NCBI GenBank assembly: GCA_002269645.1
Contig: NIVC01001531.1
Location: forward strand, 2,691 to 66,690
DNA: 64,000 nucleotides
Source of the DNA: Macrostomum lignano
Taxonomy: Eukaryota
Direction of reading: 5' to 3'
In this document: positions 12,661-61,379 of the stretch, piece after piece
Layout: each line of letters begins with the position of its first letter
Position numbering within the stretch: the stretch's first letter is position 1
The notes under the pieces: model-generated
Database searches by the model: none
Told to the model about the DNA's origin: nothing
The model's input: only the letters and a program-made list of their open reading frames with translations
Position numbers and translations under genes: made by a program

Positions 12661-13726
12661 AACATCGCCCTGAATACATCAAAAGAGAAAACCTGTAATA
12701 TTGAGTTCAGACTTGCAGATCAAATCGTTTCTATTGGCCGTTCTTTTATTTCAAATTCTTTAATCCGTGCAAAAATGAAATAAAATTAACAAACAGTACG
12801 GACAGTTTTGATTGTTCTCAATTCTCATGAACTGCGTGTACTGTACGGATTTTGTTTTCTTCTTTAAATAAGTCTTCTATGTGCTTTATTTCTTAAAAGT
12901 AGACATCTACCATAGTAGAACTTATTGATTTATGATCCCGTTATTACCTATCTCTTTTTTGTTTAGTCTGCTTTTGCATAGGCCAGGCAACAAAGCGAGA
13001 GAAAAGACTTATAGAAAAAAAGACATGCTAGCAATCTGTTCTACCCCTCAGTTTCTTCTATAATCTACAATTCTACATATATCTCTTCGCTCTGCCGAGA
13101 CTCTCTGTTATTGCTTTGCAGCTTGTTAATGCCCGTTTTAATTTGAAATCAAAACGGCAATCTTTGCTTTGGGTGTTGTACATCAAATAGTTATATAAAT
13201 ATATTAATAACATAAAGTGGCAAATGCAATGCACCACTCTTTTAAAAGAAGTTTCATTTCAAAATTATAGACTAACTTGTTAATCTGTTTGTTTGTTTTT
13301 GTGTTGATAAGCTTTATGTCTCATTAGCTGTCGTGTATTTTTAGAAATGACCAAATACCACCATAATGTTGGCACAGAGCGCAAGTGTAATTTAAGATTT
13401 AAAAAATATTATAGTTAGGCCTGGGCCCAGTGCGTTACAGAATTGCTTTTGTGCGTTTTGCTTGTACTTTTAATTTAATGACACAAAACCAGCCTTCAAA
13501 AGTTTCTAAGCAATAAAGTCTCCCATTCCATTATTCACTTTCTGCTAGCTCGTAACACTTATGTTGTATGTTATAAAACTGTTTTACGATACATATCGTT
13601 AGTTTAGGCCGTGGCAATTTTTTTAATGAAAATAATACACACCACTTATTGCGATTTTTTCCCTGCGCGAATGATTGGGCACTACGGCGGATATAATTCA
13701 ACTGGACTTTGGATGACATAAACAAG

Positions 13727-16489
13727 ATGGCACTGTTGAAACGAGCATGGATTGGTTACGATCGGTTGCTAAGGACGCATCCTGTTGTTACGCCCGCCCT
13801 GACAACCGGAGTGCTGATGGGCGTCGGAGATGTGGCTGCCCAGAGTCTGGAGGGGTACGGCTATCGGAGAATGAGTTTTCGCAGAACATCCAAGGTTTTC
13901 TTGTTGGGTGCCTGCGCTTATGTGAGTTTGCTTTTGCATGGCTTAGCAATAGATTAAAAGATTGGTTCTTCAACTGTTCTATCACCCAGTATGGGATAAT
14001 ATATCGGTTTAAGGAATCGTCCCTAATCCGTCCAAAGAATCCTTCCTAATCCACCCAAGAATCGCCCCTAATCCGTCCAAAGAATCCTCCCTAATCCACC
14101 CCAATAATCGCCCCTAATCCGTCCAAAGAATCCTCCCTAATCCACCCCAAGAATCGCCCCTAATCCGTCCAAAGAATCCTCCCTAATCCACCCCAATAAT
14201 CGCCCCTAATCCGTCCAAAGAATCCTCCCTAATCCACCCCAAGAATCGCCCCTAATCCGTCCAAAGAATCCTCCCTAATCCACCCCAAGAATCGCCCCTA
14301 ATCCGTCCAAAGAATCCTCCCTAATCCACCCCAATAATCGCCCCTAATCCGTCCAAAGAATCCTCCCTAATCCACCCCAAGAATCGCCCCTAATCCGTCC
14401 AAAGAATCCTCCCTAATCCACCCCAAGAATCGCCCCTAATCCACCCCAAGAATCGCCCCTAATCTACCTCAAGAATCGCCCCTAATCCAGCCCAAGGATC
14501 GTCTCTAATCCACCCGAAGAATCGCCTACAATCCACCTCAAGAATCGCTAATTCACCTCAAGAATCGCCCCTAATCCGCCCCAATAATCGCCCCGAATTA
14601 CCACTCCGAGAATCGCTTTTATTGTACAAGTTAGTATGAAAAATTACACAGAGGGCAAGAAGATAAAATTTATGAAATGTTCATACCGTATTTAGATATA
14701 TCGGTCTCTCTGTGCTATGCTTACTGAAAAGAAAGTATTTCCGATTAATAAAACGGAAACATTGCCTACTTTTAATTGCTTTTAATAATTTTTAATGGCG
14801 CACATTTCCGTAAACAGTTTTCCTGACTTATCAACAGAAGCTTCTTTTTGAAGGTACATGCGCGCTTTATAGATTTGTTAGTAGTATAGTTAGTTCCAGT
14901 GTTGAAAAATAAGCAGAAATTTTTTATTTTAATGCGTTAGTAACTTCATGTCTAGTGATAAATTAACATTTTGACCCACAAGTCATGACCCATCTAATGT
15001 TCATGACTTATCTGATTTCTATGACCCACCTACTGTTCATGACTTATCTTCTGATTTCTATGATCCACAGGTCATGACCCACTATGTGTCTATGACTTGT
15101 CTGGTTTCTATGTCCCACAGGTCATGACCCACCGTGTGTCTATGACTTATCTGATTTCTATGTCCCACAGGTCATGACCCACCGTGTGTCTATGACTTAT
15201 CTGATTTCTATGATCCACAGGTCATGACCCACTATGTGTCTATGACTTGTCTGGTTTCTATGTCCCACAGGTCATGACCCACCGTGTGTCTATGACTTAT
15301 CTGATTTCTATGTCCCACAGGTCATGACCCACCGTGTGTCTATGACTTATCTGATTTCTATGATCCACAGGTCATGACCCACTATGTGTCTATGACTTGT
15401 CTGGTTTCTATGTCCCACAGGTCATGACCCACCGTGTGTCTATGACTTATCTGATTTCTATGTCCCACAGGTCATGACCCACCGTGTGTCTATGACTTAT
15501 CTGATTTCTATGACCCACAGGTCATGACCCACCATGTGTCTATGACTTATCTGATTTCTATGACCCACAGGTCATGACCCACCATGTGTCTATGACTTAT
15601 CTGATTTCTATGTCCCACAGGTCATCACCCACCTTGTATTCATGACTTATCTGACTCTATGACCCGTAGGTCATAAGCCACATAATGTTCAGAATAATGA
15701 TTCCGGATCTAGATACTAGACCTAAAAGCCTCATTGATGCAAATTCTTTAACATTATTTTTCAATCACTGTTTGAATTCAAGCTTTTTAAACCAATTGCA
15801 GGGCCCAATGCTGAACAAGTGGTATCATTTCCTGTCGCACAGGTTCGCTAATCAAAGTCACCGAGTATTGAAGATGGTTGCCGCCGATCAGCTAATCATG
15901 GCCCCCGTGTCCGTGGCACTGTACGTGTCCGCTGTGTCCGCTCTGAACTCGGGCAGCCTTGCCGGCGTTGCCAGGCAGTTTGACCACTTTCCCGAGATAA
16001 TGGCCACTAATTATAAGGTTGGCGGGGCGGGGGGCTGTCTGTCTGTCTGTCTGTCTGTTTGTATGTCTGTATGTCTGTCTGTCTGTCTATCTGTCTGTCT
16101 GTCTGTCTGTCAGTCAGTCAGTATTTTCTTCCTTTCTCTTTACAAGGTGTTGATTTATCTTTCTTTCAGTTGTGGCCAGCAGTTCAGGTGTTAAACTTCA
16201 CCTTTGCACCGAGTCATTTAAGGTAAATTTTTAAAACGATTTTTTTGGCTTTTCACATAAAATGATGCTCAATAAATGCCAGGCTAAATAAATGCATATT
16301 AATTACTTGCCACCTAGGCTGCTTGTGGTGAACTGCGTCACCATAGTGTGGAACACCTACCTGTCCTGGGTGGCTCACCGGCCGCGCTTAGCGGCTAAAA
16401 AGAAATTAATAAAATCTGTGCCCACAGCCAGTGGAGTCAGCTTGGCCGCCGTTAATCATGACCAGTCGGCTTTGAAGCGTGATAACTAA
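13727..16489 (+). CDS. MPV17: Mpv17 mitochondrial inner-membrane protein (Mpv17/PMP22 family), about 211 aa
   Basis: Exons 13727-13921, 15802-16017, 16170-16222 and 16318-16489, GT-AG and frame-consistent. Family motifs: TGVLMGVGDVAAQ, GPMLNKWY, KMVAADQ, TNYKLWPAVQVLNF and RLLVVNCVTIVWNTYLSWVAH. Confidence 0.92.
14017..14620. repeat. 23-bp minisatellite with alternating 46-bp dimer, in MPV17 intron 1
   Basis: Alternation of aagaatcgcccctaatccgtcca and aagaatcctccctaatccacccc. Confidence 0.92.
14985..15680. repeat. 50-bp minisatellite in MPV17 intron 1
   Basis: Unit gtcatgacccaccgtgtgtctatgacttatctgatttctatgtcccacag; period 50 (15121 to 15171), with a three-unit variant cycle. Confidence 0.93.
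16036..16120. repeat. (TCTG)n microsatellite in MPV17 intron 2
   Basis: Read directly. Confidence 0.9.
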
Positions 16490-19810: not shown

Positions 19811-19897
19811 GCAAAAATATAGTTGAAAGTTTTATAAAATATTTGCGTGGAAACATTTCTGCGTATAAATTAAAGATAGCGCACCACAAAGCATTAA

Positions 19898-20128
19898 ATG
19901 AAAGCAGCATACTTTGGATCCGTTGCAGTGCTTGGTGGCATATCTTTGGCATTTTATTCCTGGTACCTGTTGCAGCACAACGACAAAATAGTGCATCCGA
20001 CTTCCAAGCAACGGATTGAAGAATTTGACCGTTCGTTGACGAAGCGATTTGAATTATTCGCGGGAAATTCGAGCAATAGCAGCAGCAGCAAAAGTAGCAC
20101 AGTTGCTGAAACGCCTAAGCGTGATTAG
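19898..20128 (+). CDS. Putative 76-aa single-pass membrane microprotein (ORF1 of the candidate polycistronic unit)
   Basis: ATG to TAG in non-repetitive, exon-like sequence. Hydrophobic segment FGSVAVLGGISLAFYSWYLL, then a charged helix and a Ser-rich tail. The stop is followed immediately by a donor-like GTTAGT. Confidence 0.55.
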   Translation: MKAAYFGSVAVLGGISLAFYSWYLLQHNDKIVHPTSKQRIEEFDRSLTKRFELFAGNSSNSSSSKSSTVAETPKRD

Positions 20129-20149
20129 GTTAGTTGCGTGAGCTTGTGA

Positions 20150-20820
20150 CGACCCCTAGATAATCAGGGGTGGTTGGCGGGCCCTAGATAATCAGGGGTG
20201 GTTGGCGGGCCCTGGATAATCAGGGGTGGTTTGCGAGCCTTGGATAATCAGGGGTGGTTGGTGAGCCCTAGATAATCTGGGGTGGTTGGCGAGCCCTAGA
20301 TAATCAGGGGTTGGCGAGCCCTGGATAATTAGGGGTGGTTGGCGAGCCCTGGATAATTAGGGGTGGTTGGCGAGCCCTGGATAATCAGGAGTGGTTGGTG
20401 AGCCCTGGATAATCAGGAGTGGTTGGTGAGCCTTGGATAATCAGGGGTGGTTGGTGAGCCTTGGATAATCAGGGGTGGTTGGCGAGCCCTGGATAATCAG
20501 GGGTGGTTGGCGAGCCCTGAATAATCAGGGGTGGTGGTGGGCCCTGGATAATCAAGGGTGGTGGTGGGCCCTGGATAATCAGGGGTGGTTGTTTGCGGGC
20601 CCTGGATAATCAGGGGTGGTGGTGGGCCCTGGATAATCCGGGGTGGTTGTTTGCGGGCCCTGGATAATCAGGAGTAGTGGTGGGCCCTGGATAATCCGGG
20701 GTGGTTGTTTGCGGGCCCTGGATAATCAGGGTTGGTTTTTGCGCACCCTATATAATTAGGGGTGATTGTCGGGCCGTGGATTAGTAGGTGGTTGTGTAAA
20801 TGGACCCTGGATAATTGGGG
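20150..20820. repeat. 28-31-bp G-rich minisatellite (ccctggataatcaggggtggttggcgag)n in predicted intron 20129-20911
   Basis: Read directly. Confidence 0.93.
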
Positions 20821-20949
20821 TGAATGACTGACCGTAAACACTGGATCGGGGCAGCCAACGTGAAATGATTTTAATCCCTAATTAATTATTAAACTGCCTT
20901 ACTAATTACAGGTATTCCTTCGTGCAAATCCTGAGGTTCCCCGGTTACT

Positions 20950-21231
20950 ATGCTACTATTTTTACGTCGATGTTTCTGGGAGGCGCGCGTGTTCACAGTT
21001 CAGCACCCGTTTCTGTCGCTCGCCACAATGCTTGGTTTAAGTGGGTCGGCCATCTACCTGTCAGAGGACCGTTATCGATTTTTAACCGCCCAATCTAGAG
21101 CCGAATTGCAAAGAATGGAGTCGCTAAGTTGGAGAGAAAGATGGTTTATTAATTTCAAAGATAAACAGCGACTGATTCTGCCGGAGTCTGTGTACCGCCG
21201 GCTGTTTGATGAGGATGACAAGTCTGAGTGA
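20950..21231 (+). CDS. Putative 93-aa single-pass membrane microprotein (about 100 aa if spliced 21227 to 22134); ORF2 of the candidate polycistronic unit
   Basis: GC/CpG-rich coding-like sequence 38 nt after a branch-point and acceptor (actaattacag, 20901-20911). Arg-containing N-terminus and hydrophobic segment PFLSLATMLGLSGSAIYL. A donor-like GTGAGC at 21228 overlaps the stop. Confidence 0.6.
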   Translation: MLLFLRRCFWEARVFTVQHPFLSLATMLGLSGSAIYLSEDRYRFLTAQSRAELQRMESLSWRERWFINFKDKQRLILPESVYRRLFDEDDKSE

Positions 21232-21759
21232 GCTCCCGGTCCCACTGCTACCCAGACAGTTGTGTGCTGCGCTTTTGGGGATGTGTTTGGTTGGTTGAAG
21301 ACACAGAAATTAAGTATCGCCCCTCAAAAATCCTCTCAAGAATCGCCTCTCAAGAATCGCCCAAAAGTCCCAACTTTGAGACCGAAAGATCCCAAATTCG
21401 AAAATCGTGCTTAAAATCCCAAAATCGGAAATCGCTTCAAAAATCCCAAATTCGAAAATCGCCCCAGAAATCCCAAATTTTAGAATCGTCACAATAATCC
21501 CAAATCAAGTCGTCATGATACGGTTAGTTAAAGTTCATTGTTTTTTAGTTAAAATAATCTTAGTTTTGAATTACTTACTTTTAGTAGCCTGTGTAAAATC
21601 ATTTATGCTGAAAATTGAAAAGTACAGTACGAGCATAAGTATGTTGATCTTACCATTTTGTAGAAAGCGAAACTAACTCAAGTAAAAACTCGTTGAATTT
21701 CCTAATTTCATGCTAAATGCACATTATGCTTTTTTATTTCATAATTTTTATACAGTTGA

Positions 21760-22075
21760 TATAGAGATGAGGTTAGGCTATAGGTGAAATGAGTATATAG
21801 AGATGAGATTAGCCTACATATGAGATTGTAAGCACAGACATGAGACTAAGCTACAGGAGAGTTTGTGAGCACAGTCATGAGACTAAGCTACAGGTGAGAT
21901 TGTAAACACAGACATGAGATTAAACTACAGGTGAGATTGTTAGCACAGACATGAGATTGAGCTAAAGGTGAGATTATGAGCACAGACATGAGATTAAGCT
22001 ACAGGTGGGAGTGTGAGCTCAGACATGATATTAAACTACTGGTGAGATTGTGAGCACCGACATGAGATTATGAGC
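21760..22075. repeat. About 37-bp degenerate minisatellite in predicted intron 21228-22133
   Basis: gacatgag recurs at period 37 (21911 to 21948). Confidence 0.85.
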
Positions 22076-22138
22076 CATTGCATCACAAATACAATGCAAT
22101 AGCCTTAAGTCTATGTTCCCAATTGCTGTTCAGCAGCA

Positions 22139-22744
22139 ATGCCAACCCTACTTACTAGCAGTAGTATGATGAGTACTATGCAGCGTATTAGACCGCTACT
22201 ACAGCTGAGACACCTGAGCAGCGAACGGTACAGCTATTGGCGCGGATTTCTCGATCGCCTAGCAACAGAGGCCAATGCCTTGACAACAGAGCCTTCAGCT
22301 AGTGGTAAACAGGCCACCACAGCTGACTCATACCTGCTGCCTGAGTCGAGAGATCTCGCTAGGAAAGCCCGGCCGATGCAGAACGGCGGCCTGCTGCCGC
22401 GGCTAAAGGATCCCAGACACGAGGCGCCGGTGGTGATGCCGCCGTATCAGCCTATTGATGACTGGCACCCGAAGCAGGCTCTGTTTGGTCAGAACGACTA
22501 CATTGACATACTGGGCGAGGGCGAGGTCACGCCGAAAGATCTCTACGTCGGGCCCAATTACACTCGGCTGAGTCGGGGCAGCGAGTTTCTGAGAAATTTC
22601 CGGCGCCTATCGGTGCAAGACGAGTATATGAAGGAGTTTATGCCCACTAGGCGGTCCATTATTCAGCTGAATAATTACAATTCGCTCAAGTATAGAAATA
22701 AGAGAAGGAATAATGTGTTCCCTAAGTATAGGGAAGAGCCTTGA
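22139..22744 (+). CDS. MRPL51: Mitochondrial large-subunit ribosomal protein mL51; intronless CDS; true start may be Met 22166 or 22178
   Basis: GGLLPR and WHPKQALFGQNDYIDILG motifs are characteristic of invertebrate mL51 (recalled). The N-terminus MQRIRPLLQLRHLSS looks like a mitochondrial presequence. Confidence 0.82.
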   Translation: MPTLLTSSSMMSTMQRIRPLLQLRHLSSERYSYWRGFLDRLATEANALTTEPSASGKQATTADSYLLPESRDLARKARPMQNGGLLPRLKDPRHEAPVVMPPYQPIDDWHPKQALFGQNDYIDILGEGEVTPKDLYVGPNYTRLSRGSEFLRNFRRLSVQDEYMKEFMPTRRSIIQLNNYNSLKYRNKRRNNVFPKYREEP

Positions 22745-22867: not shown

Positions 22868-23400
22868 TTGTTAGGCTTTCCATCTTCCTTTACCCTCTTC
22901 TTTCCTCTCTCTACCCTCTCCTCACCCCTCTTTACCCTCTCCTCGCCCCTCTCTACCCTCTTCTCTCCCCTCTTTACCCTCTCCTCGCCCCTCTTTACCC
23001 TCTCCTCGCCCCTCTCTACCCTCTTCTCTCCCCTCTCTACCCTCTTCTCTCCCCTCTCTACCCTCTTGTCTCCCCTCTTTACCCTCTCCTCGCCCCTCTC
23101 TAACCTCTTCTCTCCCCTCTTTACCCTCTCCTCGCCCGTCTTTACCCTCTCCTCGCCCCTCTTTACCCTCTCCTCGCCCCTCTCTACCCTCTTCTCTCCC
23201 CTCTCTACCCTCTTCTCTCCCCTCTTTACCCTCTCCTCGCCCCTCTCTAACCTCTTCTCTCCCCTCTTTACCCTCTCCTCGCCCCTCTTTACCCTCTCCT
23301 CGCCCCTCTCTACCCTCTTCTCTCCCCTCTTTACCCTCTCTTCTCTCCTTCTCCCCTCCGCTCTCTTTACCATATTTCACCCTCTTTACCCTCTCTCTAT
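22868..23400. repeat. 21-bp CT-rich minisatellite (tttaccctctcctcgcccctc)n
   Basis: Read directly; source of three spurious ORFs. Confidence 0.95.
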
Positions 23401-23834
23401 CTCCCTTCCATCATTTCCTTTTCATTCTCTTTCATTGCTAAGCTACAACACAAGAAATTCGAACTCACTTCAGCCTATTTTATGATCTGTAAAAACAAAA
23501 AATACACCCTAGAGAAAAAAAACATTTTTTCAGCGAAAAAATAAAAATTGATGTATAATCTAATGAAAAGCAATTTAAAACACCTCTGAACGTTGAAAAT
23601 TGTTAATTTTTGTACGTCAAAAACTTATTTTCAGTAGAGACTAAAACTAATTTATAATTGATTAATTTGCTTCTATCTGACTTGATCATTTTATTAAATT
23701 GAATGGGTGCCTGGCGAACTCAAGTGATTGATATGATAAAATTGTAAATGATTTTGCAAATTATCATACTCGTTTCCGAAATTAAATCAAATTATTTTGT
23801 ATAGAAAAACACTGGTAAAATGTGTTGGCGATTC

Positions 23835-24320
23835 ACTTTAATGTACACTCGCTCCCTTCTGAGCCCCATTCCAACCCCACCCAATGTACACTCGCTCCCG
23901 ACTGAGCCCCATTCCAACCCCACCCAATGTACACTCGCTCCCGACTGAGCCCCATTCCAACCCCACCCCAATGTACACTCGCTCCCGACTGAGCCCCATT
24001 CCAACCCCACCCCAATGTACACTCGCTCCCGACTGAGCCCCATTCCAACCCCACCCCAATGTACACTCGCTCCCGACTAAGCCCCATTCCAACCCCACCC
24101 AATGTACACTCGCTCCCGACTAAGCCCCATTCCAACCCCACCCCAATGTACACTCGCTCCCGACTAAGCCCCATTCCAACCCCACCCAATGTACACTCGC
24201 TGCCGACTGAGCCCCATTCCAACCCCACCCCAATGTACACTCGCTCCCGACTAAGCCCCATTCCAATCTACCCCAATGTACACTCGCTGCCGACTGAGCC
24301 CCATTCCAATCCACCCCTAT
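23835..24320. repeat. 43-44-bp minisatellite (aatgtacactcgctcccgactgagccccattccaaccccaccc)n
   Basis: Read directly. Confidence 0.95.
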
Positions 24321-24408
24321 TTATACATTGCGGTGCTTCAGACTTTGTGTCACAAGTTTGTAAAGCTTCATAGAAAAAAATTTCTGAATCAAAACAAAAA
24401 AGCAAACC

Positions 24409-27400
24409 ATGACAGGATCTGCTACTACCCGACAGGTACCTGTCAATCAAAGCTCATCATCAGGTTTCATTGGACGAGCAATTCTTGTGTTGATAATTAG
24501 TTTCATTGTCTACAGCTTGTTGTCGGCCTACTTTCCTGCAAGTACTGACAGTATCGCACCTGATGAATCAGGAAGCTTAAAAGAAGACCAAGTATCATTA
24601 GTTACCAGCGCTGTAGCATTCGAAAATGATCGACTTAAAGTCTATCGGACTGTATCTTCGAACAGTGGAAAAATAAAGAAAAAATCTGAGCTTATTGGCG
24701 AATTCAGTCTGGCATGGAGTGGAGAGAAATTGTCCGTTCAATCCAAGGTTTGTTTTGTTATATTACTTGATTTTCTTGGAATTCTAAGAAATTTTGCTAC
24801 GATTCTTGGAAAGTGTCGGCTCATTCTTAGTATACTTATGCAAGTACATGTAGTATTATTCGTAGCTAATTTTCAAGTGTACATTATCTCTGTTTCTTGG
24901 AATCAATTTACATGTAACTGCATGTAAGTGTAAAACTATTTCTTGGAATGTGACGCTCTATGTTAGCATTTGAAGTTTTATTTCTTAGAATATGAAGCTC
25001 GATCTGCTTCCCAGAATGTGAAAGCATATTTCTTATAATGTGGAGCTGCATTTCTTAGAATGTAAAGCTTTATTTTTAAAACGTGGAGCTGTATTTCTTA
25101 GAATGTGGAGCTGTATTTCTTGGAATGTGGAGCTGCATTTCCTGGAATGTGGAGCTGTATTTCTTGGAATGTGGAGCTGCATTTCTTGGAATGTGGAGCT
25201 GTATTTCTTAGAATTTGGAGCTTTATTTCTGAATATTTTGGTAATAGAAGCTATATTTCCTAAGATGTAGAGCTCTGTTTCTTGAAAAGCGAAGCTCTCT
25301 TTTTTAGAAAGTTGATCCGCTTCCAAAATAGATCATATTGACTCTAAGGATTTTTGATATAAATTCTTTGGGTGTGTCTCTATATGATTCTTAGAATGTG
25401 TCACTCTGATTCTTAGAATTTATCTCTCTGATTCTTAGAATTTGTCTCTCTGATTCTTAGAATTTGTCTCTCTGATTCTTAGAATTTGTCTCTCTGATTC
25501 TTAGAATTTGTCACTCTGATTCTTAAAATTTGTCACTGATTATTAAAATTTGTCACTCTGATTCTTAGAATTTGTCTCTCTGACTCTTAGAATGTGTCCC
25601 TCTGCTTCGTAAAATGTTTCACTCTGATTTTTGAAGTGTCTAGCACTGATTCTTAGAAAATACCATTTAAATTATTTGCAAATCAACAAAAATTACTGTC
25701 ACATTCCAGTCCGACCAGCAACCCAGCAGTTCTCGTCCTACAGATGCACGTGACCTGTCAATCACCTGGAGCAACGGAGGCAGCAGTCTTACTGTCACCA
25801 CGCTACCCCAGTCGTTTATTAATTCTCGATTCTTGAGCTGCCACCGCGCCGTCCTGACAACGGCAGCAAAAGAGTCTGCCAGTCTCTGCCTCGAGCTGCC
25901 GGCAGCCTCAGTCTACGGCGGCGGGGCCGCGTTCGACCAGCGCTGGCCAATCAACAGCCAGTCGATGCCAAGTCAAGCCTACGTCAGCAACGATTTCGCG
26001 GAACTCACCGGTGCTAAACGATCCGATCTCTGGGGCGGATTCGTTGAACGACTCTGGCTAACGTCTCGGGGCCTGCTGGTGCATGTGGACGATGCCACAC
26101 CGCTGTCGGTTGGTCAAGAAGCCGATCGTAGGCTATGCTTGACTGCCACACCCGATGACGAGGCTTATCTTTGGCGATCGAATCCTAGGGATTATTTGAA
26201 TGTCACAATCTGTGCGGCTGACAGCGCCAAGGAGGCTTACTTGGCTGCGCACAGCTGGTGAGAGCTCTCTGGCTTTTACACGTATCTATGGGCGATACTA
26301 ACTCTTACCTAATGCCCACTTGTAAGTCAGGGCGACTGTACACCCCCTGTGCCGGTGTCTGTCCGCTCTGGGATCAGGGATCGGGCATGACTGCTTGCCT
26401 GTCTGCAAAAACTTATAGGCTTTCATTCCGTGTCCTCCACTAGCCCTCAGTGTCCTCCACTAGCCTTCAGTGTCCTCCACTAGCCTTCAGTGTCCTCCAC
26501 TAGCCTTCAGTGTCCTCCACTAGCCTTCAGTGTCCTCCACTAGCCTTCAGTGTCCTCCACTAGCCTTCAGTGTCCTCCACTAGCCTTCAGTGTCCTCCAC
26601 TAGCCTTCAGTGTCCTCCACTAACCTTCAGTGTCCTCCACTAGCCTTCAGTGTCCTCCACTAGCCTTCAGTGTCCTCCACTAGCCTTCAGTGTCCTCCAC
26701 TAGCCTTCAGTGTCCTCCAATAGCCTTCAGTGTCCTCCACTAGCCTTCAGTGTCCTCCACTAGCCTTCAGTGTCCTCCACTAGCCTTCAGTGTCCTCCAC
26801 TAGCCTTCAGTGTCCTCCACTAGCCTTCAGTGTCCTCCACTAGCCTTCAGTGTCCTCCACTAGCCTTCAATGTCCTCCACTAGCCTTCAGTGTCCTCCAC
26901 TAGCCTTCAGTGTCCTCCAATAGCCTTCAGTGTCCTCCACTAGCCTTCAGTGTCCTCCACTAGCCTTCAGTGTCCTCCACTAGCCTTCAGTGTCCTCCAC
27001 TAGCCTTCAGTGTCCTCCACTAGCCTTCAGTGTCCTCCACTAGCCTTCAGTGTCCTCCACTAGCCTTCAGTGTCCTCCACTAGCCTTCAGTGTCCTCCAC
27101 TAGCCTTCAGTGTCCTCCACTAGCCTTCAGTGTCCTCCACTAGCCTTCAGTGTCCTCCACTAGCCTTCAGTGTCCTCCACTAGCCTTCAGTGTCCTCCAC
27201 TAGCCTTCAGTGTCCTCCACTAGCCTTCAGTGTCCTCCACTAGCCTTCAGTGTCCTCCACTAGCCTTCAGTGTCCTCCACTAGCCTTCAGTGTCCTCCAA
27301 TAGCCTTCAGTGTCCTCCACTAGCCTTCAGTGTCCTCCACTAGCCTTCAGTGTCCTCCACTAGCCTTCAGTGTCCTCCACTAGCCTTCAGTGTCCTCCAC

Positions 27401-29477
27401 TAGCCTTCAGTGTCCTCCACTAGCCTTCAGTGTCCTCCACTAGCCTTCAGTGTCCTCCAATAGCCTTCAGTGTCCTCCACTAGCCTTCAGTGTCCTCCAC
27501 TAGCCTTCAGTGTCCTCCACTAGCCTTCAGTGTCCTCCACTAGCCTTCAGTGTCCTCCACTAGCCTTCAGTGTCCTCCACTAGCCTTCAGTGTCCTCCAC
27601 TAGCCTTCAGTGTGTCCTCCACTAACTTTCAGTGTCCTACAGTAATCTTCAGTGTCCTACAATAACCTTCAGTGTCCTCCACTAGCCTTCAGTGTCCTCC
27701 ACTAGCCTTCAGTGTCCTCCACTAGCCTTCAGTGTGTCCTCCACTAACTTTCAGTGTCCTACAGTAATCTTCAGTGTCCTACAATAACCTTCAGTGTCCT
27801 ACTGTAATCTTCAGTGTCCTCCACTAACCTTCACTATCCTACACTAACCTTCATTGTCCTACAGTAATCTTCAGTGTCCTCCACTAACCTTCAGTGTCCT
27901 CCACTAACCTTCACTATCCTACACTAACCTTCATTGTCCTACAGTAATCTTCAGTGTCCTCCACTAACCTTCAGTGTCCTCCACTAACCTTCACTATCCT
28001 ACACTAACCTTCATTGTCCTACAGTAATCTTCAGTGTCCTCCACTAACCTTCAGTGTCCTACACTAACCTTCACTATCCTACACTAACCTTCATTGTCCT
28101 ACAGTAATCTTCAGTGTCCTCCACTAACCTTCAGTGTCCTCCACTAACCTTCACTATCCTACACTAACCTTCATTGTCCTACAGTAATCTTCAGTGTCCT
28201 CCACTAACCTTCACTATCCTACACTAACCTTCATTGTCCTACAGTAATCTTCAGTGTCCTCCACTAACCTTCAGTGTCCTCCACTAACCTTCACTATCCT
28301 ACACTAACCTTCATTGTCCTACAGTAATCTTCAGTGTCCTCCACTAACCTTCAGTGTCCTACAATAACCTTCAGTGTCATACAGTAATCTTCAGTGTCCT
28401 CCACTAACCTTCAATGTCCTCAAATGCCCTTCAATGCTCTACTAACGTTCAATGTCCTCAAATGACCTTCAATGCTCTCCACTAACCTTCAATATCGTCC
28501 AATGACCTTCTGGTGTCCTCCACTGGTCTTTAATGTTCTCTACTATTAGCTTCGTCACTACAACGTTTAATGTTATTCACTAATTTTAAATGTCGACTAA
28601 CCTTGAATGTCCTCCAATGGCCCCAATGTATTCCACTATCCTTCCATGCGACACATGCAATGCGAAGCAATCAAACAATCTTTCCTCGCAACAGGCTGTA
28701 CACTCGTCCAACATCGTCTCCCGACCGTCGCATCCTTCGCGAACCAATCTGGTGCACGTGGGCCAGGCACAAGACGGCGGTGGCTCAATCTGATGTGGAA
28801 TCTCTGGCTAATGACGTCACTAGGCTTGGCTTTCCCGCCAGTCAGATTGAAATTGACGATCGGTACACGATTAACTACGGCGATTTGGCATGGGATCCGA
28901 TTAAGTTTCCTAATCCTGCCGAGATGACGGCCAAACTAAAGTACATCGGGCACCGGGTCACGACTTGGATTGTGCCATTTTTTAATAAGAACACTTCGGC
29001 CTATGATGAAGCTGCGGCTGCTGGATATCTTTTGATTGAAAGCGTTAACGACAACAACAACAGATCAGCCGATATTCTCTGGTGGCAGGGAGTCGGAGGT
29101 CAGCTGGACCCGACCAACCCCAGCGCCGTCAGCTGGTTCGCGAACCGGCTGGCCAGATTTCGTCAGCAATTTGGCATCGAATCGTTTAAATTCGACGCTG
29201 GCGAGGTGTACTATCTGAGGGGGGCTCGAACTCAGGCCCCGCTGGAGGCGCCGATGCAGTTCACGACGGCCTACGTTCAGCAGGTGGCGGCAAAGTTCGG
29301 CGGAGCTGTCGAAGTTCGAGCCGGCTATCGAACTCAGTCAGTACCGGTTGCGACGCGGATGTTTGACAAGGACAGCCACTGGGGCGGGAGGAACGGACTG
29401 CGATCCATTGTGCCCAATGCGCTGATGCTGTCCATGGCGGGGTACCACTTTGTGATGCCCGACATGATTGGCGGTGA

Positions 29478-29561
<84 letters not shown>

Positions 29562-29564
29562 TAC

Positions 29565-29649
<85 letters not shown>

Positions 29650-30176
29650 TTCTGGGGCTCCAGAGTCAACAACATTGCATCCAATTTCCAGGAAACGCGT
29701 ACTCCGAGGACTCCATGGAAGGCGCCAGGCCGGAACGTGAGCTGTACATCCGCTGGATGCAGCTCAGCAGTTTTCTACCAATCGTGCAGTTTTCAATCGC
29801 ACCCTGGGACTATGACCAAGAAGTGACGGACATTGCTCTGAAGACGCTGAAGCTCAGAGCGGAAGTGTACATCCCCGCGTTGGAAGCGGCTTTGACCCAG
29901 TTGTTCAGCACGGGAGAGCCTGTCACCAGACCGCTGTGGTGGGCTTCGGACGGTACAGTCGATGACGTCAGACTTTGGACAGTGGACGATCAGTTCCTTG
30001 TTGGCGACTCGCTGCTAGTGGCTCCGGTAATTCGACAAAGCACAGTTGCTAGGGACATCTTGCTGCCGTCGGGGCGATGGAAGGACGGCTACAGCGGCCG
30101 ACTGGTTGATGGACCGCTGGTGCTGAAGGACCACCCGGCCAAACTGGATATGGTGCCGCATTTTATCAGAGTGTAG
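24409..30176 (+). CDS. MYORG: MYORG-type glycoside hydrolase family 31 (type II membrane alpha-galactosidase-like), about 716 aa
   Basis: Exons 24409-24747, about 25710-26257, 28695-29473 and 29692-30176 with compatible phases 0/2/1 (2151 nt). N-terminal TM helix; motifs [16 protein letters not shown] (nucleophile Asp), MPDMIGGNA (acid/base Asp), [10 protein letters not shown] and [15 protein letters not shown]. The exon 2 acceptor is the least certain. Confidence 0.88.
25040..25270. repeat. 22-bp minisatellite (gaatgtggagctgtatttcttg)n in MYORG intron 1
   Basis: Read directly. Confidence 0.88.
25385..25660. repeat. 22-bp minisatellite (ctctgattcttagaatttgtct)n in MYORG intron 1
   Basis: Read directly. 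Confidence 0.88.
26437..28530. repeat. 20-bp minisatellite (cactagccttcagtgtcctc)n in MYORG intron 2
   Basis: Nearly perfect from 26437 to about 27610, then patterned variants, degenerating toward 28530. Confidence 0.97.
29479..29650. repeat. (TCTG)n microsatellite in MYORG intron 3
   Basis: Read directly, starting immediately after the gtgagt donor. Confidence 0.97.
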
Positions 30177-31067: not shown

Positions 31068-32405
31068 TCACAGCAGTCTTGTCTTCTCGTCGGTGGATTT
31101 TTCCATTTGGTAGGCGTTGCTGTTGCTGTTGACACGGGCATCCGAGTGGGTCACGCTGCCGCCATCGATGACTATAATGCCTCCAGTGCTTGGCCCATAA
31201 AAGCAGTAGTGCTGCATGAAGAACAGAATGTTATAGAAAATGGAGACAATGCCGAGACCGAGTTTGGTTGGGTCGCCTAGCAGCGAGTCCCAGTCATTAT
31301 AGTTATATGCCAGCAAAAGCATCTGGGCAATGCTGAGAAAGCCGCCAGAAAAATCCAGGTAAACCTGGCCAATGGACCAACCCCAGGTGGACTTTCGACT
31401 GTAGTTCATATAAGCCTGCGGCACGTATTTAACCAGTGTAATCAAGAGTTTTAGGTAGGACGCAAAATAGATAAACTGTAGCCAGGTGAGACCGCAGGTA
31501 GCTCCACAGGCGGCGGTTAGTATCAGACAGATTAATAGGAATGACGCCATACCGCCTAGTAACAGACTGCCAATTATGGAGAGTTTCTGTCCGCCGCGTT
31601 CATAAATAAAGCATTGAATGCCCTGGAATATGGTGATGCCGAAGCAGTGCAAGGCGAAGATGCAGTCAGCCAGCTGCACTGGGATGACGCCTCGGGGATG
31701 CTGCTGGTGATACATCACCTGCAATGGCGGCACCCAGTACAGGCCGACATTGAAGATGCTGTAGACAATAAAGCCCATGATGTTGAAGCCGACAAAGTCG
31801 AAATTTAAACCGACCACAGACTTTCTGGTGTAGTTCAGCCAAGTCTGCGGGTAGTAGGACGCCGACCAGCAGAAGACGTACAACAGACCGACAGTGAAGT
31901 TTATAACGTTGATCCATCGACTGCGAATAACTTGGATTCGAACGAATCGGTCGGGACGATTCTCGAACTCGGGATTGGTGCAGTTCAGACCGATGATCAG
32001 GTGACCTGGCGTCAGACCGACTATCACGAATGGCATGGCGTGATAGGTTTCGTTGGTCGATGGAAGCCAGACGCGAGCCAGATCGCCAATCACTGGCACT
32101 CGCTGCTTGCTGGTGATCGCGTCGCCGGCCTCCATCTGATAGGTGAAGTACAGATAGTCGTCCTTGGTTGAGTTGCTGAATTGGCCAGATAATTGGAAGA
32201 ATAGATGGGCCTGTTCTCCAACTTCGATAGCTACGTCAGTCTGCGAGAATGTCACCGTGATCGGTTCTGTCTCGTCGATTGTCTGGAACAGCTCCTCTTC
32301 GACTGTAGTACCACCCGTAGTTGTTGTTGACGTGACCATCATACTTTGAGCCGCTAGAATAACGAGGAAAAAGGTAATTATAATGCCTGATTTAGACGCA
32401 AGCAT
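31068..32405 (-). CDS. CTNS: Cystinosin (lysosomal cystine/H+ symporter, PQ-loop family), 445 aa, intronless CDS
   Basis: Signal peptide, lumenal domain with N-glycosylation sequons, 7-TM region with two PQ loops (SASYYPQ, KYVPQAYMNY), and RKSVVGLNFDF, KSTWGWSIG and GDPTKLGLG motifs. Confidence 0.95.
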   Translation of the reverse strand: MLASKSGIIITFFLVILAAQSMMVTSTTTTGGTTVEEELFQTIDETEPITVTFSQTDVAIEVGEQAHLFFQLSGQFSNSTKDDYLYFTYQMEAGDAITSKQRVPVIGDLARVWLPSTNETYHAMPFVIVGLTPGHLIIGLNCTNPEFENRPDRFVRIQVIRSRWINVINFTVGLLYVFCWSASYYPQTWLNYTRKSVVGLNFDFVGFNIMGFIVYSIFNVGLYWVPPLQVMYHQQHPRGVIPVQLADCIFALHCFGITIFQGIQCFIYERGGQKLSIIGSLLLGGMASFLLICLILTAACGATCGLTWLQFIYFASYLKLLITLVKYVPQAYMNYSRKSTWGWSIGQVYLDFSGGFLSIAQMLLLAYNYNDWDSLLGDPTKLGLGIVSIFYNILFFMQHYCFYGPSTGGIIVIDGGSVTHSDARVNSNSNAYQMEKSTDEKTRLL

Positions 32406-59300: not shown

Positions 59301-59389
59301 CTAGTGCAACAATTTCCTTAGCTTTATAATGGTTCCATTTTGTTTGGCATGCACTTCTTTTTATGTTTGAAATGGTGTCTCTTTTTGTT

Positions 59390-60460
59390 TAAAAATGTGG
59401 CTCTTTAATGTTTGACATGGTAGCTCTTCTATGTTTGACATAGTAGCTCTTTTGTGTTTGACATGATAGCTCTTTAATGTTTGACGTGGTGGCTCTTTTG
59501 TGTTTGACATGATAGCTCTTTAATGTTTAACATTGTGGCTCTTCTATGTTTGGCATGGTAGCTCTTTAATGTTGACATGGTGGCTCTTCTATGTTTGACA
59601 TGGTAGCTCTTTAATGTTTCACATGGTGGCTCTTTAATGTTTAACATGGTGGCTCTTTAATGTTCTTCATGATGTAGCTCTTTTATGTTACACATGGTGG
59701 CACTTTAATGTTCGACATGGTGGCTCTTTAATGTTTGACATTAAGTCATATATATGTTTGACATGGTGGCTCTTAAATGTTTGACATGGTGGCTCTTAAA
59801 TGTTTGACATGGTGGCTCTTTAATGTTCAACATTGTGGCTCTTTTATGTTTGACATGGTGGCTCTTAAATGTTTGACATGGTGGCTCTTAAATGTTTGAC
59901 ATGGTGGCTCTTAAATGTTTGACATGGTGGCTCTTTAATATTCTACATGGTGGCTCTTTTATGTTTGACATGGTGGCTCTTTAATGTTCTTCATGGTATA
60001 GCTCTTTTATGGTAGACATGGTGGCTCTTTAATGTTCAACATAGTGGCTCTTTAATGTTCAAAATGGTGGCTCTTTAATATTTGACATAAAGTCACATAT
60101 ATGTTTGACATGGTAGCTCCTAAATGTTTGACATGGTGGCTCTTTATGTTTGACATGGTGAATCTTTTTTGTTCTATATGGTAACTCTTTTATGTTTTAT
60201 ATGGTGGCTTTTTAATGTTTGACATGGTGGCTCTTTAATGTTTGAAATGGTGGCTCTTTTATATTTGACATGGTGGCTCTTTAATGTTTGACATGGTGGC
60301 TCCTAATTGTTTGACATGGTGGCTCTTCAATGTTCAAAATGGTGGCTCTTTAATGTTCGAAATGGTGGCTCTTTTATGTTTGACATTGTGGCTCTTAAAT
60401 GTTTGACATGGTGGGTCTTTTATGTTTGACATGGTGGCTCTTCTATGTTTGACATTGCGC
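59390..60460. repeat. 23-bp minisatellite (tttgacatggtggctctttaatg)n in Helitron copy 2
   Basis: Read directly. Confidence 0.95.
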
Positions 60461-61379
60461 TTCTTTGATGTTTAGCAGTTTTATTGTGTTTTTAAGGTGT
60501 TTTAATAAAAAAATCTTTTTTGCACTACTAAGATTTGAACCCAGGTCGCTATATTGGCATTCCAGTCTGTTCGCATCAGGGCTATCTCTTTTCAATTGGA
60601 GAACATGAATTGTGGCCCTTATAATTCAATTCTTACAGCAAGTCAATTGGAGAAAAAAGTTATGACATAATCAATTTCCCAGTTAGCCAGTATCAGTCTT
60701 ACTTCAAGTTAGCAATATGGTTACGCAATTTAAATCATGTCGTGTGAGCATTTCTTCGGCACTGTTTTCAACTTGTTCGGAATCTTTATCGGAGTTGAAA
60801 TTCAGTCAGTCAGTTTTTTCTCTAGCATTCTTACAATGCATTTCAGGTCGAAAGAGCTTCTTGACCTTTGCAGAAAAGCATGTTTTTCGAATATTTAATC
60901 CCTTTAACATTGAGCAATTTCTTAGCCAAGATGCATGTACCGTCCCAGGAAAATTTCTGATCGAATGGTGCAAGTTTGAAGAAAATCGGTTGAGCCGTTT
61001 TTTCTGAAATCTATTGCATAGCTACATACATACATACATACATACATACATACAAACAACTCATTTTTAGGATATAGGAAGCTGATTTAGAACAATGCCT
61101 AGATACTATAGCTACTTTGGTATATGGCCACCTTAGACATGCGTATAACTGGGGCCTGGGGTATAGATAGGGACAATTGGCCTCACACTCTTGAATAGAC
61201 TAGAAAAAATCAAAGGCAACCAAGCAAATTGTTGTCAAAATATAGAGCTGCACTCCTTTTACTCTTTTGGGTTTTTATCTTTCAGAATCTACCCTCTCTC
61301 AACAAACTTTAACCTATGCTAAGGCTTTAAATTAATATTTATTATGTGGTAGGCCGGTCTACCACTGGGGCTTCGGCAA

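What the first reader, a model, noticed from the sequence alone, without database searches (positions are those of the whole stretch)
19898..22744. Candidate spliced tricistronic mRNA: two membrane microproteins upstream of MRPL51
Seen: the ORF1 stop is fused to a donor (TAG|GTTAGT, 20128/20129; the same donor hexamer is used in the RNF123 model at 45701). An array-filled interval follows, then a branch-point and acceptor (actaattacag|, 20911), and the ORF2 ATG 38 nt later. ORF2 ends on a second donor (GA|GTGAGC, 21228), followed by another array-filled interval and tandem acceptors (ttcag|cag|, 22133/22136) just before MRPL51. Both intervals resemble the array-filled introns of the well-supported genes in this window. 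Inference: one spliced mRNA carries three separate ORFs with very short spacers, read by leaky scanning or reinitiation. Known precedents for such mRNAs exist (for example SNURF-SNRPN and the MIEF1 upstream microprotein), but I do not recall this arrangement at MRPL51. If the acceptors instead take a spliced leader, this is an SL trans-spliced operon.
Basis: partly seen in the sequence, partly recalled or inferred. Interest (0 to 1): 0.82.

Follow-up and report, generated by a model that had tools for sequence, protein, structure and literature searches.

The report
Flatworm gene cluster, probably an SL operon
The three reading frames are real, but they lie in the flatworm Macrostomum lignano, where neighbouring genes are routinely cut into separate messages by spliced-leader trans-splicing, so this is most likely an ordinary operon and not one spliced three-protein mRNA.

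Summary
The sequence features are all present at the stated coordinates: ORF1 (76 aa), ORF2 (93 aa), an mL51/MRPL51 ORF (201 aa), the GT and AG motifs, and the tandem arrays. The window is Macrostomum lignano contig NIVC01001531.1 (assembly Mlig_3_7). [quoted passage not shown]

The RNA-seq-based GenBank annotation lists ORF2 and MRPL51 as separate genes. The MRPL51 model is 5'-partial and starts at 22130, inside the proposed "intron 2". The same annotation bridges all three array-filled introns of the neighbouring GH31 gene.

The donor motifs are not special. GT[GA]AG occurs 14 times in the region, including 8 in or beside the 37-mer array. Donor 2 would delete ORF2's stop codon and make ORF2 overlap the MRPL51 ATG by 20 nt. 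Arrays cover 37.5% of the window, so they do not mark introns.

Repeat-adjusted spacers (151 and 459 nt) meet the published 1-kb operon criterion. ORF1 and ORF2 have no detectable homologues. They are less diverged than the flanks among three near-identical genomic copies.

The tricistronic mRNA is unlikely. No SL or junction reads could be examined.

The parts
19833..19870 (+). Two TATA-like motifs (TATAAAA 19833-19839, TATAAAT 19864-19870) in the 90-nt unique stretch between the 23-mer array and the ORF1 ATG. This is a possible promoter for the first cistron.
   Evidence: Read directly from the sequence. This is inference only; such motifs are common in AT-rich DNA.
19898..20128 (+). ORF1, 76 aa, with a hydrophobic N-terminal segment and a Ser-rich tail. 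It is not annotated in GenBank and its coding status is uncertain.
   Evidence: Searches show the ORF with no homologue, Pfam or PDB match. There is one synonymous change among the 3 copies. The in-frame codon score is the best of six frames but mid-ranked among same-sized ORFs. It has no internal ATG (not significant).
20129..20142 (+). Candidate donors just after the ORF1 stop: GTTAGT at 20129, and a consensus GTGAG at 20138.
   Evidence: Both are identical in all 3 copies. A GTT-type donor (AAG|GTTTGT) is used in GH31 intron 1.
20150..20781 (+). 28-mer tandem array (about 22 copies) in the ORF1-ORF2 spacer. The other two genomic copies have 377 nt here.
20888..20911 (+). ATTAAA (20888-20893), a CTAAT branch-like motif, and the acceptor TTACAG| ending at 20911. 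I propose this as the SL trans-splice acceptor of ORF2, or a cis acceptor if ORF1 is a 5' exon.
   Evidence: TTACAG matches the published trans-splice acceptor motif [T/C]TNCAG (PMC8629364). It is identical in the 3 copies.
20950..21231 (+). ORF2, 93 aa, annotated in GenBank as a separate complete CDS (hypothetical protein). It is lineage-restricted.
   Evidence: There is no homologue among 1.84 billion representative proteins; the only two other hits are spurious matches to repeat proteins. It is 100% identical in the 3 copies. An in-frame TGA at 20932-20934 lies between the acceptor and the ATG.
21228..21233 (+). It is probably not used.
   Evidence: Using it removes the ORF2 stop codon.
21312..22070 (+). 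ORF2-MRPL51 spacer with arrays at 21312-21361, 21385-21505 and 21799-22070. The last is a 37-mer whose unit carries CAG|GTGAGA and CTACAG. It measures 272 nt here and about 1000 and about 1870 nt in the other copies.
22129..22136 (+). Tandem acceptors ttcag|cag|, 5 and 2 nt before the MRPL51 ATG. I propose these as the SL trans-splice site.
   Evidence: The annotated MRPL51 CDS starts at 22130 and is flagged partial.
22139..22744 (+). MRPL51 / mL51 gene, single exon, 201 aa from its ATG. GenBank annotates 204 aa, 5'-partial, from 22130.
   Evidence: Pfam PF10244 E=1.3e-18. The closest relatives are mL51 of Lingula and Octopus.
22888..24317 (+). Spacer to the next + strand gene, with arrays at 22888-23349 and 23840-24317. 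In the L002 copy a 5'-partial 94-aa CDS is annotated inside the first array, so the + strand is transcribed past MRPL51.
24388..30176 (+). GH31 gene. It has 4 exons (24388-24747, 25710-26257, 28695-29473, 29692-30176) and 3 array-filled introns. It serves as the control for what a real array-filled intron looks like in the annotation.
   Evidence: The rebuilt 723-aa products match the GenBank proteins BOX15_Mlig006082g2 and g3 exactly.

Best explanation
The locus is part of a co-oriented gene cluster in the flatworm Macrostomum lignano (contig NIVC01001531.1; contig position = window position + 2690). ORF1, ORF2 and MRPL51 are separate cistrons.

The most likely mechanism is a polycistronic precursor transcribed rightward from a promoter at or upstream of ORF1. 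Each upstream cistron is cleaved and polyadenylated. The 35-nt spliced leader (...TTGCATG) is then trans-spliced onto TTACAG| (20911) for ORF2 and onto ttcag|cag| (22133/22136) for MRPL51. This gives capped monocistronic mRNAs with 38-nt and 2-5-nt genomic leaders.

The array-filled intervals are operon spacers or 3' UTRs, not introns. The GT motifs at the two stop codons are incidental, at least for ORF2-MRPL51.

What is shown: the ORFs and motifs, the species, the separate gene models, the 5' end of the MRPL51 model, and spacers within the published operon threshold. What is inferred: SL addition at these two AGs, and co-transcription.
For: Species and its biology:
- The window is 100% identical to L001 = NIVC01001531.1. 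NIVC is the Mlig_3_7 accession (PMC5730564).
- Operon spacers are repeat-filled, with a repeat-adjusted mode of about 100 bp and a 1-kb threshold. The trans-splice acceptor motif is [T/C]TNCAG (PMC8629364).

This locus:
- Repeat-adjusted spacers are 151 nt (ORF1 stop to acceptor 1) and 459 nt (ORF2 stop to acceptor 2).
- Acceptor 1 is TTACAG.
- The RNA-seq-derived GenBank annotation has ORF2 and MRPL51 as separate genes in all annotated copies. The MRPL51 CDS is 5'-partial from 22130, 4-7 nt upstream of the acceptors.
- MRPL51 (Mlig028470) and GH31 (Mlig006082) carry different transcriptional-unit prefixes. The gN suffix numbers the genomic copies.
- The pipeline bridged three array-filled GH31 introns but did not join ORF2 to MRPL51.
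- All genes from Bcl-2 to GH31 are on the + strand, with none on the opposite strand between them.
Against: - No SL-containing read, poly(A) site or precursor read could be inspected.
- The SL sequence and SL RNA gene are absent from the window, as expected.
- Acceptor 2 (GTTCAG) does not match the published hexamer at its first position.
- The annotated 5' end (22128-22130) is a few nt upstream of the AG rather than exactly at it. The GH31 model's 5' end also does not sit on an AG. These ends could therefore be transcription start sites or ends set by read coverage.
- No AATAAA lies in either spacer; there is only ATTAAA at 20888 and inside the array.
- MRPL51 has its own transcriptional-unit prefix. 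That is expected if units break in repeats (PMC8629364), but it equally fits an independent gene.
- The SL AUG is out of frame with both ATGs and would open overlapping uORFs of 43 and 11-12 codons.
Confidence: 0.58

Rival explanations
1. Independent neighbouring genes. ORF2 and MRPL51 (and ORF1, if it is real) each have their own promoter and poly(A) site. They are merely co-oriented in a repeat-rich region, and the AGs before the ATGs are chance or unused.
For: - The gene models are separate, and MRPL51 has its own transcriptional-unit prefix.
- The annotated 5' ends of MRPL51 and GH31 do not coincide exactly with an AG.
- [TC]TNCAG occurs 2.9 per kb, so an acceptor-like motif within 40 nt of an ATG is expected about 10% of the time.
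- About 55% of conserved M. lignano genes are not trans-spliced.
Against: - The unique sequence available for a promoter is small: about 170 nt before ORF2 and about 70 nt between the 37-mer array and MRPL51.
- The spacers meet the published operon criterion.
- There are pyrimidine-rich acceptors directly before both ATGs.
- The + strand is annotated as transcribed inside the array downstream of MRPL51 in L002.
Confidence: 0.22
2. Partial cis-splicing. ORF1 lies on a 5' exon that is cis-spliced (20128 or 20137 to 20912) onto the ORF2 exon. This gives either a dicistronic ORF1-ORF2 mRNA read by leaky scanning, or an ORF2 mRNA with a long uORF. MRPL51 is still a separate mRNA.
For: - ORF1 has no CDS of its own in GenBank although the 93-aa ORF2 does. 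This fits one gene model in which only the longest ORF is annotated.
- Two donors (GTTAGT at 20129, consensus GTGAG at 20138) lie within 15 nt of the ORF1 stop and are conserved in 3 copies.
- GTT donors are used in this genome (GH31 intron 1).
- The ORF1 ATG has a weak context (T at -3), and no other ATG lies between it and the ORF2 ATG in the spliced form.
Against: - The ATG-free state is not significant (P=0.14 by codon shuffle; 8 of 49 similar ORFs share it).
- The acceptor matches the trans-splice motif equally well.
- ORF1's low divergence among the copies would be unexplained if it were only a UTR, although the counts are tiny.
- No transcript evidence is available.
Confidence: 0.17
3. 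One reading: a single mature mRNA, cis-spliced at 20128^20912 and 21227^22134/22137, carries ORF1, ORF2 and MRPL51. All three are translated by leaky scanning or reinitiation.
For: - GT and AG motifs are present at the stated positions and conserved in 3 copies.
- Array-filled introns do exist in this window (GH31).
Against: - The annotated MRPL51 model starts inside 'intron 2' and is a separate gene from ORF2.
- The pipeline that produced this annotation bridged the array-filled GH31 introns.
- Donor 2 deletes ORF2's stop codon, and ORF2 then overlaps the MRPL51 ATG by 20 nt.
- Eight ATGs precede the MRPL51 ATG, which is implausible for a housekeeping mitoribosomal protein.
- Eight better donor matches lie closer to acceptor 2, in or beside the 37-mer array; the array unit carries CAG|GTGAGA.
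- 'Intron 2' varies from 0.9 to 2.5 kb among the copies.
Confidence: 0.03
4. ORF1 and/or ORF2 are not protein-coding. They would be chance ORFs in transcribed UTR or spacer sequence, or in a non-coding RNA. In that case MRPL51 is the only real protein gene in the interval.
For: - Neither ORF has a homologue outside M. lignano: ORF2 was searched exhaustively, ORF1 only by word index.
- There are no Pfam or PDB matches.
- The AlphaFold model of ORF2 is poor, with pLDDT 51.
- Codon scores rank 14th and 26th among 49 same-sized ORFs.
- The hydrophobic segments are below the usual transmembrane threshold.
Against: - ORF1 plus ORF2 show 1 change in 513 nt, against 15-18 events in 852 nt of unique flanks among the genomic copies (Fisher P=0.003-0.008). 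This is comparable to MRPL51.
- The single change is synonymous.
- The in-frame codon score is the best of six frames for both, and ORF2's score equals MRPL51's.
- The ORFs fill the small unique islands between arrays.
Confidence: 0.35

Closest known systems
SL trans-spliced operons of Macrostomum lignano (Wudarski et al. 2017, PMC5730564; Ustyantsev & Berezikov 2021, PMC8629364)
   Same: Same species and assembly. The genes are co-oriented. The spacers are repeat-filled and shrink to 151 and 459 nt after repeat subtraction, below the 1-kb criterion. An AG acceptor lies just upstream of each downstream ATG, and TTACAG fits the published motif. A conserved housekeeping gene sits as a downstream cistron.
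   Different: SL reads at these sites were not seen here. The second acceptor is GTTCAG. The upstream cistrons are two very small ORFs without homologues, and one of them is unannotated.
Caenorhabditis elegans operons (SL2-type and SL1-type)
   Same: A polycistronic precursor is resolved by 3' end formation coupled to SL trans-splicing. Mature mRNAs are monocistronic. Nuclear genes for mitochondrial proteins are common operon members (from my own knowledge).
   Different: Nematode spacers are about 100 nt and free of repeats, and a dedicated SL2 is used. M. lignano has a single SL ending in AUG, and its spacers are inflated by tandem arrays.
Cis-spliced bicistronic or uORF-microprotein mRNAs (SNURF-SNRPN; MIEF1 upstream microprotein)
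   Same: Small ORFs lie upstream of a larger conserved ORF on the same strand. In both MIEF1 and this locus a mitoribosome-related protein is involved.
   Different: In those cases one mature mRNA demonstrably carries both ORFs. Here the annotation separates the genes, the proposed splice destroys ORF2's stop codon, and MRPL51 would sit behind 8 ATGs.
mL51 (MRPL51, Pfam PF10244)
   Same: ORF3 residues 100-188 match the full Pfam model (E=1.3e-18). The N-terminus is basic and rich in hydroxylated residues, like a mitochondrial presequence.
   Different: It is longer than typical animal mL51 (201 aa against 128-199 aa) because of about 100 N-terminal residues. It is only about 46% identical to the nearest non-Macrostomum protein.

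Membership tests
SL trans-spliced operon (M. lignano operational definition, PMC8629364) | Immediately adjacent genes on the same strand, with no opposite-strand gene between them | tested here: met
   ORF2, MRPL51 and GH31 are consecutive + strand annotated genes. ORF1, the Mpv17-like gene and Bcl-2 lie upstream on the + strand.
SL trans-spliced operon (M. lignano operational definition, PMC8629364) | Repeat-adjusted intergenic distance below 1 kb | tested here: met
   The distances are 151 nt (ORF1 to acceptor 1) and 459 nt (ORF2 to acceptor 2) after subtracting TRF arrays. They were measured from CDS ends, so they are upper bounds on transcript-to-transcript distance.
SL trans-spliced operon (M. 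lignano operational definition, PMC8629364) | The downstream gene carries the 35-nt SL at its 5' end (SL-containing RNA-seq reads) | not testable with these tools
   No read data or genome-browser tracks were available. The only indirect evidence is that the MRPL51 model is 5'-partial and begins 4-7 nt from the AGs.
SL trans-spliced operon (M. lignano operational definition, PMC8629364) | [T/C]TNCAG motif at the outron-exon junction | tested here: inconclusive
   TTACAG at 20906-20911 matches. GTTCAG at 22128-22133 misses the first position. The motif occurs 2.9 per kb by itself.
Cis-spliced polycistronic mRNA (SNURF-SNRPN / MIEF1 type) | One mature mRNA contains all the ORFs | tested here: not met
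   This test is indirect. The RNA-seq-based GenBank models keep ORF2 and MRPL51 apart, and the MRPL51 model starts inside the proposed intron. The same pipeline bridged the array-filled GH31 introns. Raw reads were not examined. The link from ORF1 to ORF2 was not tested.
Cis-spliced polycistronic mRNA (SNURF-SNRPN / MIEF1 type) | The ORFs remain intact and separate after splicing, in an arrangement that allows scanning or reinitiation | tested here: not met
   ORF2 loses its stop codon, becomes 99-100 aa, and overlaps the MRPL51 ATG by 20 nt. Eight ATGs precede the MRPL51 ATG. The ORF1-ORF2 pair alone would satisfy this feature (38-nt spacer, no intervening ATG).
mL51 / MRP-L51 (PF10244) | Significant full-length match to the family profile | tested here: met
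   E=1.3e-18 and 67.3 bits against a cut-off of 25, covering profile positions 1-90 of 93. The homologues found are annotated mL51.
Conserved microprotein families (for ORF1 and ORF2) | Detectable homologues outside the species | tested here: not met
   For ORF2 the exhaustive HMMER search found only itself plus two spurious repeat proteins. For ORF1 the word-index search found no candidate. Neither has a Pfam or PDB hit. Other Macrostomum species appear to be absent from the searchable collections.

The most novel reading that the evidence does not exclude
ORF1 and ORF2 are two Macrostomum-specific microproteins made from one cis-spliced dicistronic mRNA. Its exon 1 ends at the ORF1 stop, the 28-mer array is the intron, and ORF2 is read by leaky scanning past a weak, otherwise ATG-free ORF1. 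This dicistronic unit is in turn the upstream cistron of an SL operon with the mitoribosomal gene MRPL51, so cis-polycistrony would be nested inside trans-spliced polycistrony.
Probability: 0.1. Interest if true: 0.45.

Novelty: new member of a known kind. Interest (0 to 1): 0.18.

Why it matters
There is little beyond annotation value. If the operon reading holds, this is one more of the roughly ten thousand M. lignano genes already assigned to operons with repeat-inflated spacers.

The useful outcomes are practical:
- It gives a warning for sequence-only scans. In SL-trans-splicing species, an acceptor just before an ATG with no coding continuity upstream signals trans-splicing, not a cis intron.
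- It adds an unannotated 76-aa ORF (ORF1) and an unannotated Mpv17-like gene copy to this contig.
- ORF1 and ORF2 are candidate lineage-specific small proteins. They lie next to genes for mitochondrial proteins (Mpv17-like, mL51, Bcl-2 family) and could be tested cheaply.

Tried and rejected
- Homology for ORF1 and ORF2. Pfam to E=1 found nothing. PDB sequences to E=10 gave only chance hits. The word-index search found nothing for ORF1 and only self for ORF2. The exhaustive search of 1.84 billion representatives for ORF2 returned self plus two repeat-protein artefacts.
- AlphaFold of ORF2 without an alignment gave pLDDT 51, which is unusable, so no fold search was run.
- Transcript contigs. 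The exact-protein look-up found only the three genomic contigs, with no RNA-derived contig. The MRPL51 search found no other Macrostomum species, so a synteny or dN/dS test across species was impossible.
- The three genomic copies are more than 99% identical in the ORFs. Only a coarse comparison of ORF against flank divergence was possible.
- The codon-usage score gave the correct frame as best, but it did not separate these ORFs from other same-sized ORFs.
- ATG depletion in ORF1 is not significant.
- Searches found no SL RNA gene in the window and no Rfam family.
- Literature and supplement searches for Mlig028470 or MRPL51 found nothing.
- I first tried to read the 'g2' suffix of the MRPL51 locus tag as 'second gene of a transcriptional unit'. 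I rejected this after the GH31 look-up showed that g1, g2 and g3 number the three genomic copies.
- The exact look-up of the 94-aa L002 CDS failed.
- A strict-motif splice solver for GH31 found no model, because intron 1 uses GTTTGT. A relaxed solver succeeded.
Full report
**Observation.**
- ORF1 runs 19898-20128 (76 aa), ORF2 20950-21231 (93 aa) and ORF3 22139-22744 (201 aa).
- ORF3 is a clear mL51/MRPL51 (Pfam PF10244, E=1.3e-18).
- TAG|GTTAGT (20128/20129), ...ctaattacag| (20911), GA|GTGAGC (G at 21228) and ttcag|cag| (22133/22136) are all present.
- Tandem arrays fill 20150-20781, 21312-21505 and 21799-22070.

One detail of the model fails on the sequence alone. Donor 2 overlaps ORF2's TGA. 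The proposed splice therefore removes the stop codon, lengthens ORF2 to 99-100 aa, and makes it end 20 nt after the MRPL51 ATG.

**Where the window comes from.**
- The exact ORF2 protein is encoded on three contigs of GCA_002269645.1.
- Locus L001 is 100% identical to window 10950-31231, so the window is NIVC01001531.1:2691-66690.
- NIVC is the Macrostomum lignano Mlig_3_7 assembly (PMC5730564).
- The other two loci are near-identical duplicates from this partly duplicated genome.

This species matters for the interpretation.
- 30-39% of its genes receive a 35-nt spliced leader (CGGTCTCTTACTGCGAAGACTCAATTTATTGCATG).
- About 15% of genes lie in operons.
- The authors showed that operon spacers are inflated by repeats. 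After repeat subtraction the spacers peak near 100 bp, and 1 kb is used as the operon threshold.
- The trans-splice acceptor motif is [T/C]TNCAG and the cis donor motif is GT[G/A]AG (PMC8629364).

**Are the motifs and arrays informative?** They are not.
- Arrays cover 37.5% of the window and occur in introns and between genes alike.
- GT[GA]AG occurs 14 times between 19.8 and 23 kb. One lies 9 nt after donor 1, and eight lie in or beside the 37-mer array, whose unit carries CAG|GTGAGA, a better consensus match than donor 2.
- [TC]TNCAG occurs 2.9 times per kb.
- Donor 1's unusual GTT cannot be held against it. I rebuilt the neighbouring GH31 gene, and its intron 1 uses AAG|GTTTGT. The rebuilt 723-aa proteins match GenBank entries exactly.

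**What the deposited, RNA-seq-based annotation says.**
- ORF2 is a separate, complete 93-aa CDS in all three copies.
- MRPL51 is a separate gene whose CDS is flagged partial and begins at 22130 with SAAM.
- The nearest in-frame upstream stop is at 22106-22108. A 5'-partial CDS starting at 22130 therefore means the mRNA model starts at 22128-22130.
- The GH31 copies are named Mlig006082g1, g2 and g3 on the three contigs, so the gN suffix numbers genomic copies.
- MRPL51 (Mlig028470g2 on the third contig) therefore belongs to a different transcriptional-unit cluster from GH31. Most simply it is a cluster of its own.
- The same pipeline joined GH31 exons across three array-filled introns. These contain two 22-mer arrays, a 2.1-kb 20-mer array and (GTCT)44. 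Arrays thus did not stop it from finding real junctions, yet it found none between ORF2 and MRPL51.
- The authors note that unspliced transcriptional units tend to break in repeat-rich operon spacers. That is the pattern seen here.

**Fit to the operon definition.**
- The genes are adjacent and co-oriented.
- Repeat-adjusted spacers are 151 nt and 459 nt, and 703 nt onward to GH31.
- Acceptor 1 is TTACAG. Acceptor 2 is GTTCAG, a near match.
- The SL's terminal AUG would be out of frame with both ATGs. It would open overlapping uORFs of 43 and 11-12 codons. The SL AUG has T at -3 (SL sequence). The ORF2 and MRPL51 ATGs have A and G at -3.
- I could not see SL reads, poly(A) sites or start-site data. 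SL addition and co-transcription therefore remain inferred.
- Independent promoters are the main rival, because the annotated 5' ends of MRPL51 and GH31 do not sit exactly on an AG.

**Are ORF1 and ORF2 genes?**
- Neither has any detectable homologue. For ORF2 this holds after an exhaustive search of 1.84 billion representative proteins. For ORF1 only the word-index search was run.
- Pfam, PDB and an AlphaFold model gave nothing.
- Hydrophobic segments are borderline for membrane spans.
- In their favour, ORF1 plus ORF2 show one synonymous change in 513 nt among the three genomic copies. The unique non-coding flanks show 15-18 events in 852 nt (Fisher P=0.003-0.008). MRPL51 shows 3-5 changes in 606 nt.
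- The annotated frame has the best codon score of six frames for both ORFs, though that score does not stand out among same-sized ORFs.
- I rate ORF2 as probably coding and ORF1 as uncertain.

- ORF1 has no CDS of its own in GenBank.
- Two donors follow its stop codon.
- No ATG lies between the ORF1 and ORF2 start codons in the spliced form (not significant).
- The ORF1 ATG has a weak context.

**Comparison and verdict.**
- The locus works like, and by two of the tested criteria qualifies as, a Macrostomum lignano SL operon with repeat-filled spacers. That kind is described genome-wide (PMC8629364).
- It does not meet the defining features of a SNURF-SNRPN or MIEF1-type polycistronic mRNA for the MRPL51 link.
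- The finding is ordinary for this species. The specific locus, the unannotated ORF1 and an unannotated Mpv17-like gene upstream are small annotation gains.
- Interest is low. The decisive test is to look for SL, junction and poly(A) reads in existing public data.

Noticed in passing
window 13709-16489 (+): An Mpv17/PMP22-like gene appears to be present but unannotated in this contig. Its exons lie near 13709-13957, about 15800-16010 and about 16180-16489, with array-filled introns. The L003 copy carries an annotated 211-aa Mpv17_PMP22 gene at the syntenic place.
   Followed up: partly
window 24388-30176 (+): All three introns of the GH31 gene are dominated by tandem arrays. Intron 3 (29474-29691) is almost entirely (GTCT)44, directly continuing the donor GTGAGTCT. 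The same intron is about 930 nt in L003. Intron 1 uses a non-consensus AAG|GTTTGT donor. UniRef calls the protein 'Family 10 glycosylhydrolase', whereas Pfam places it in GH31.
   Followed up: yes
whole window: 37.5% of the 64 kb is tandem arrays made of many unrelated units of 16-436 nt, and they are strongly strand-asymmetric in composition. The same 23-mer family recurs at 420-2215 and 59359-60473.
   Followed up: partly
window 20150-20781 and 21799-22070 versus L002 and L003: Array copy number differs widely among the three otherwise more than 97% identical genomic copies. The first array is 631 nt here against 377 nt in the others. The second is 272 nt here against about 1000 and about 1870 nt.
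   Followed up: partly
L002 12807-13412 and 13825-14109: In the L002 copy the MRPL51 ORF is intact but not annotated. Instead a 94-aa 5'-partial 'CDS' is annotated inside the CT-rich array downstream. This is evidently a transcript fragment of the + strand running through the array. Its exact sequence was not found by look-up.
   Followed up: partly
window 9516-30176 (+), 31068-32405 (-), 39641 to beyond 42405 (-): Six consecutive + strand genes (Bcl-2 family, Mpv17-like, ORF1, ORF2, MRPL51, GH31) are followed by minus-strand PQ-loop and RNF123 genes. At least three of the + strand genes are families I know to be tied to mitochondria. The operon might extend beyond the three ORFs, although Mpv17-like to ORF1 is about 1300 nt after repeat subtraction.
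   Followed up: partly
window 20912-20949: Three of the 38 nt between acceptor 1 and the ORF2 ATG differ in the other copies (20920, 20921, 20936). ORF2 itself (282 nt) has no difference, so there is a sharp change in constraint at the ATG.
   Followed up: no
RNF123 is indeed on the minus strand, but I did not verify this exon boundary.
   Followed up: no
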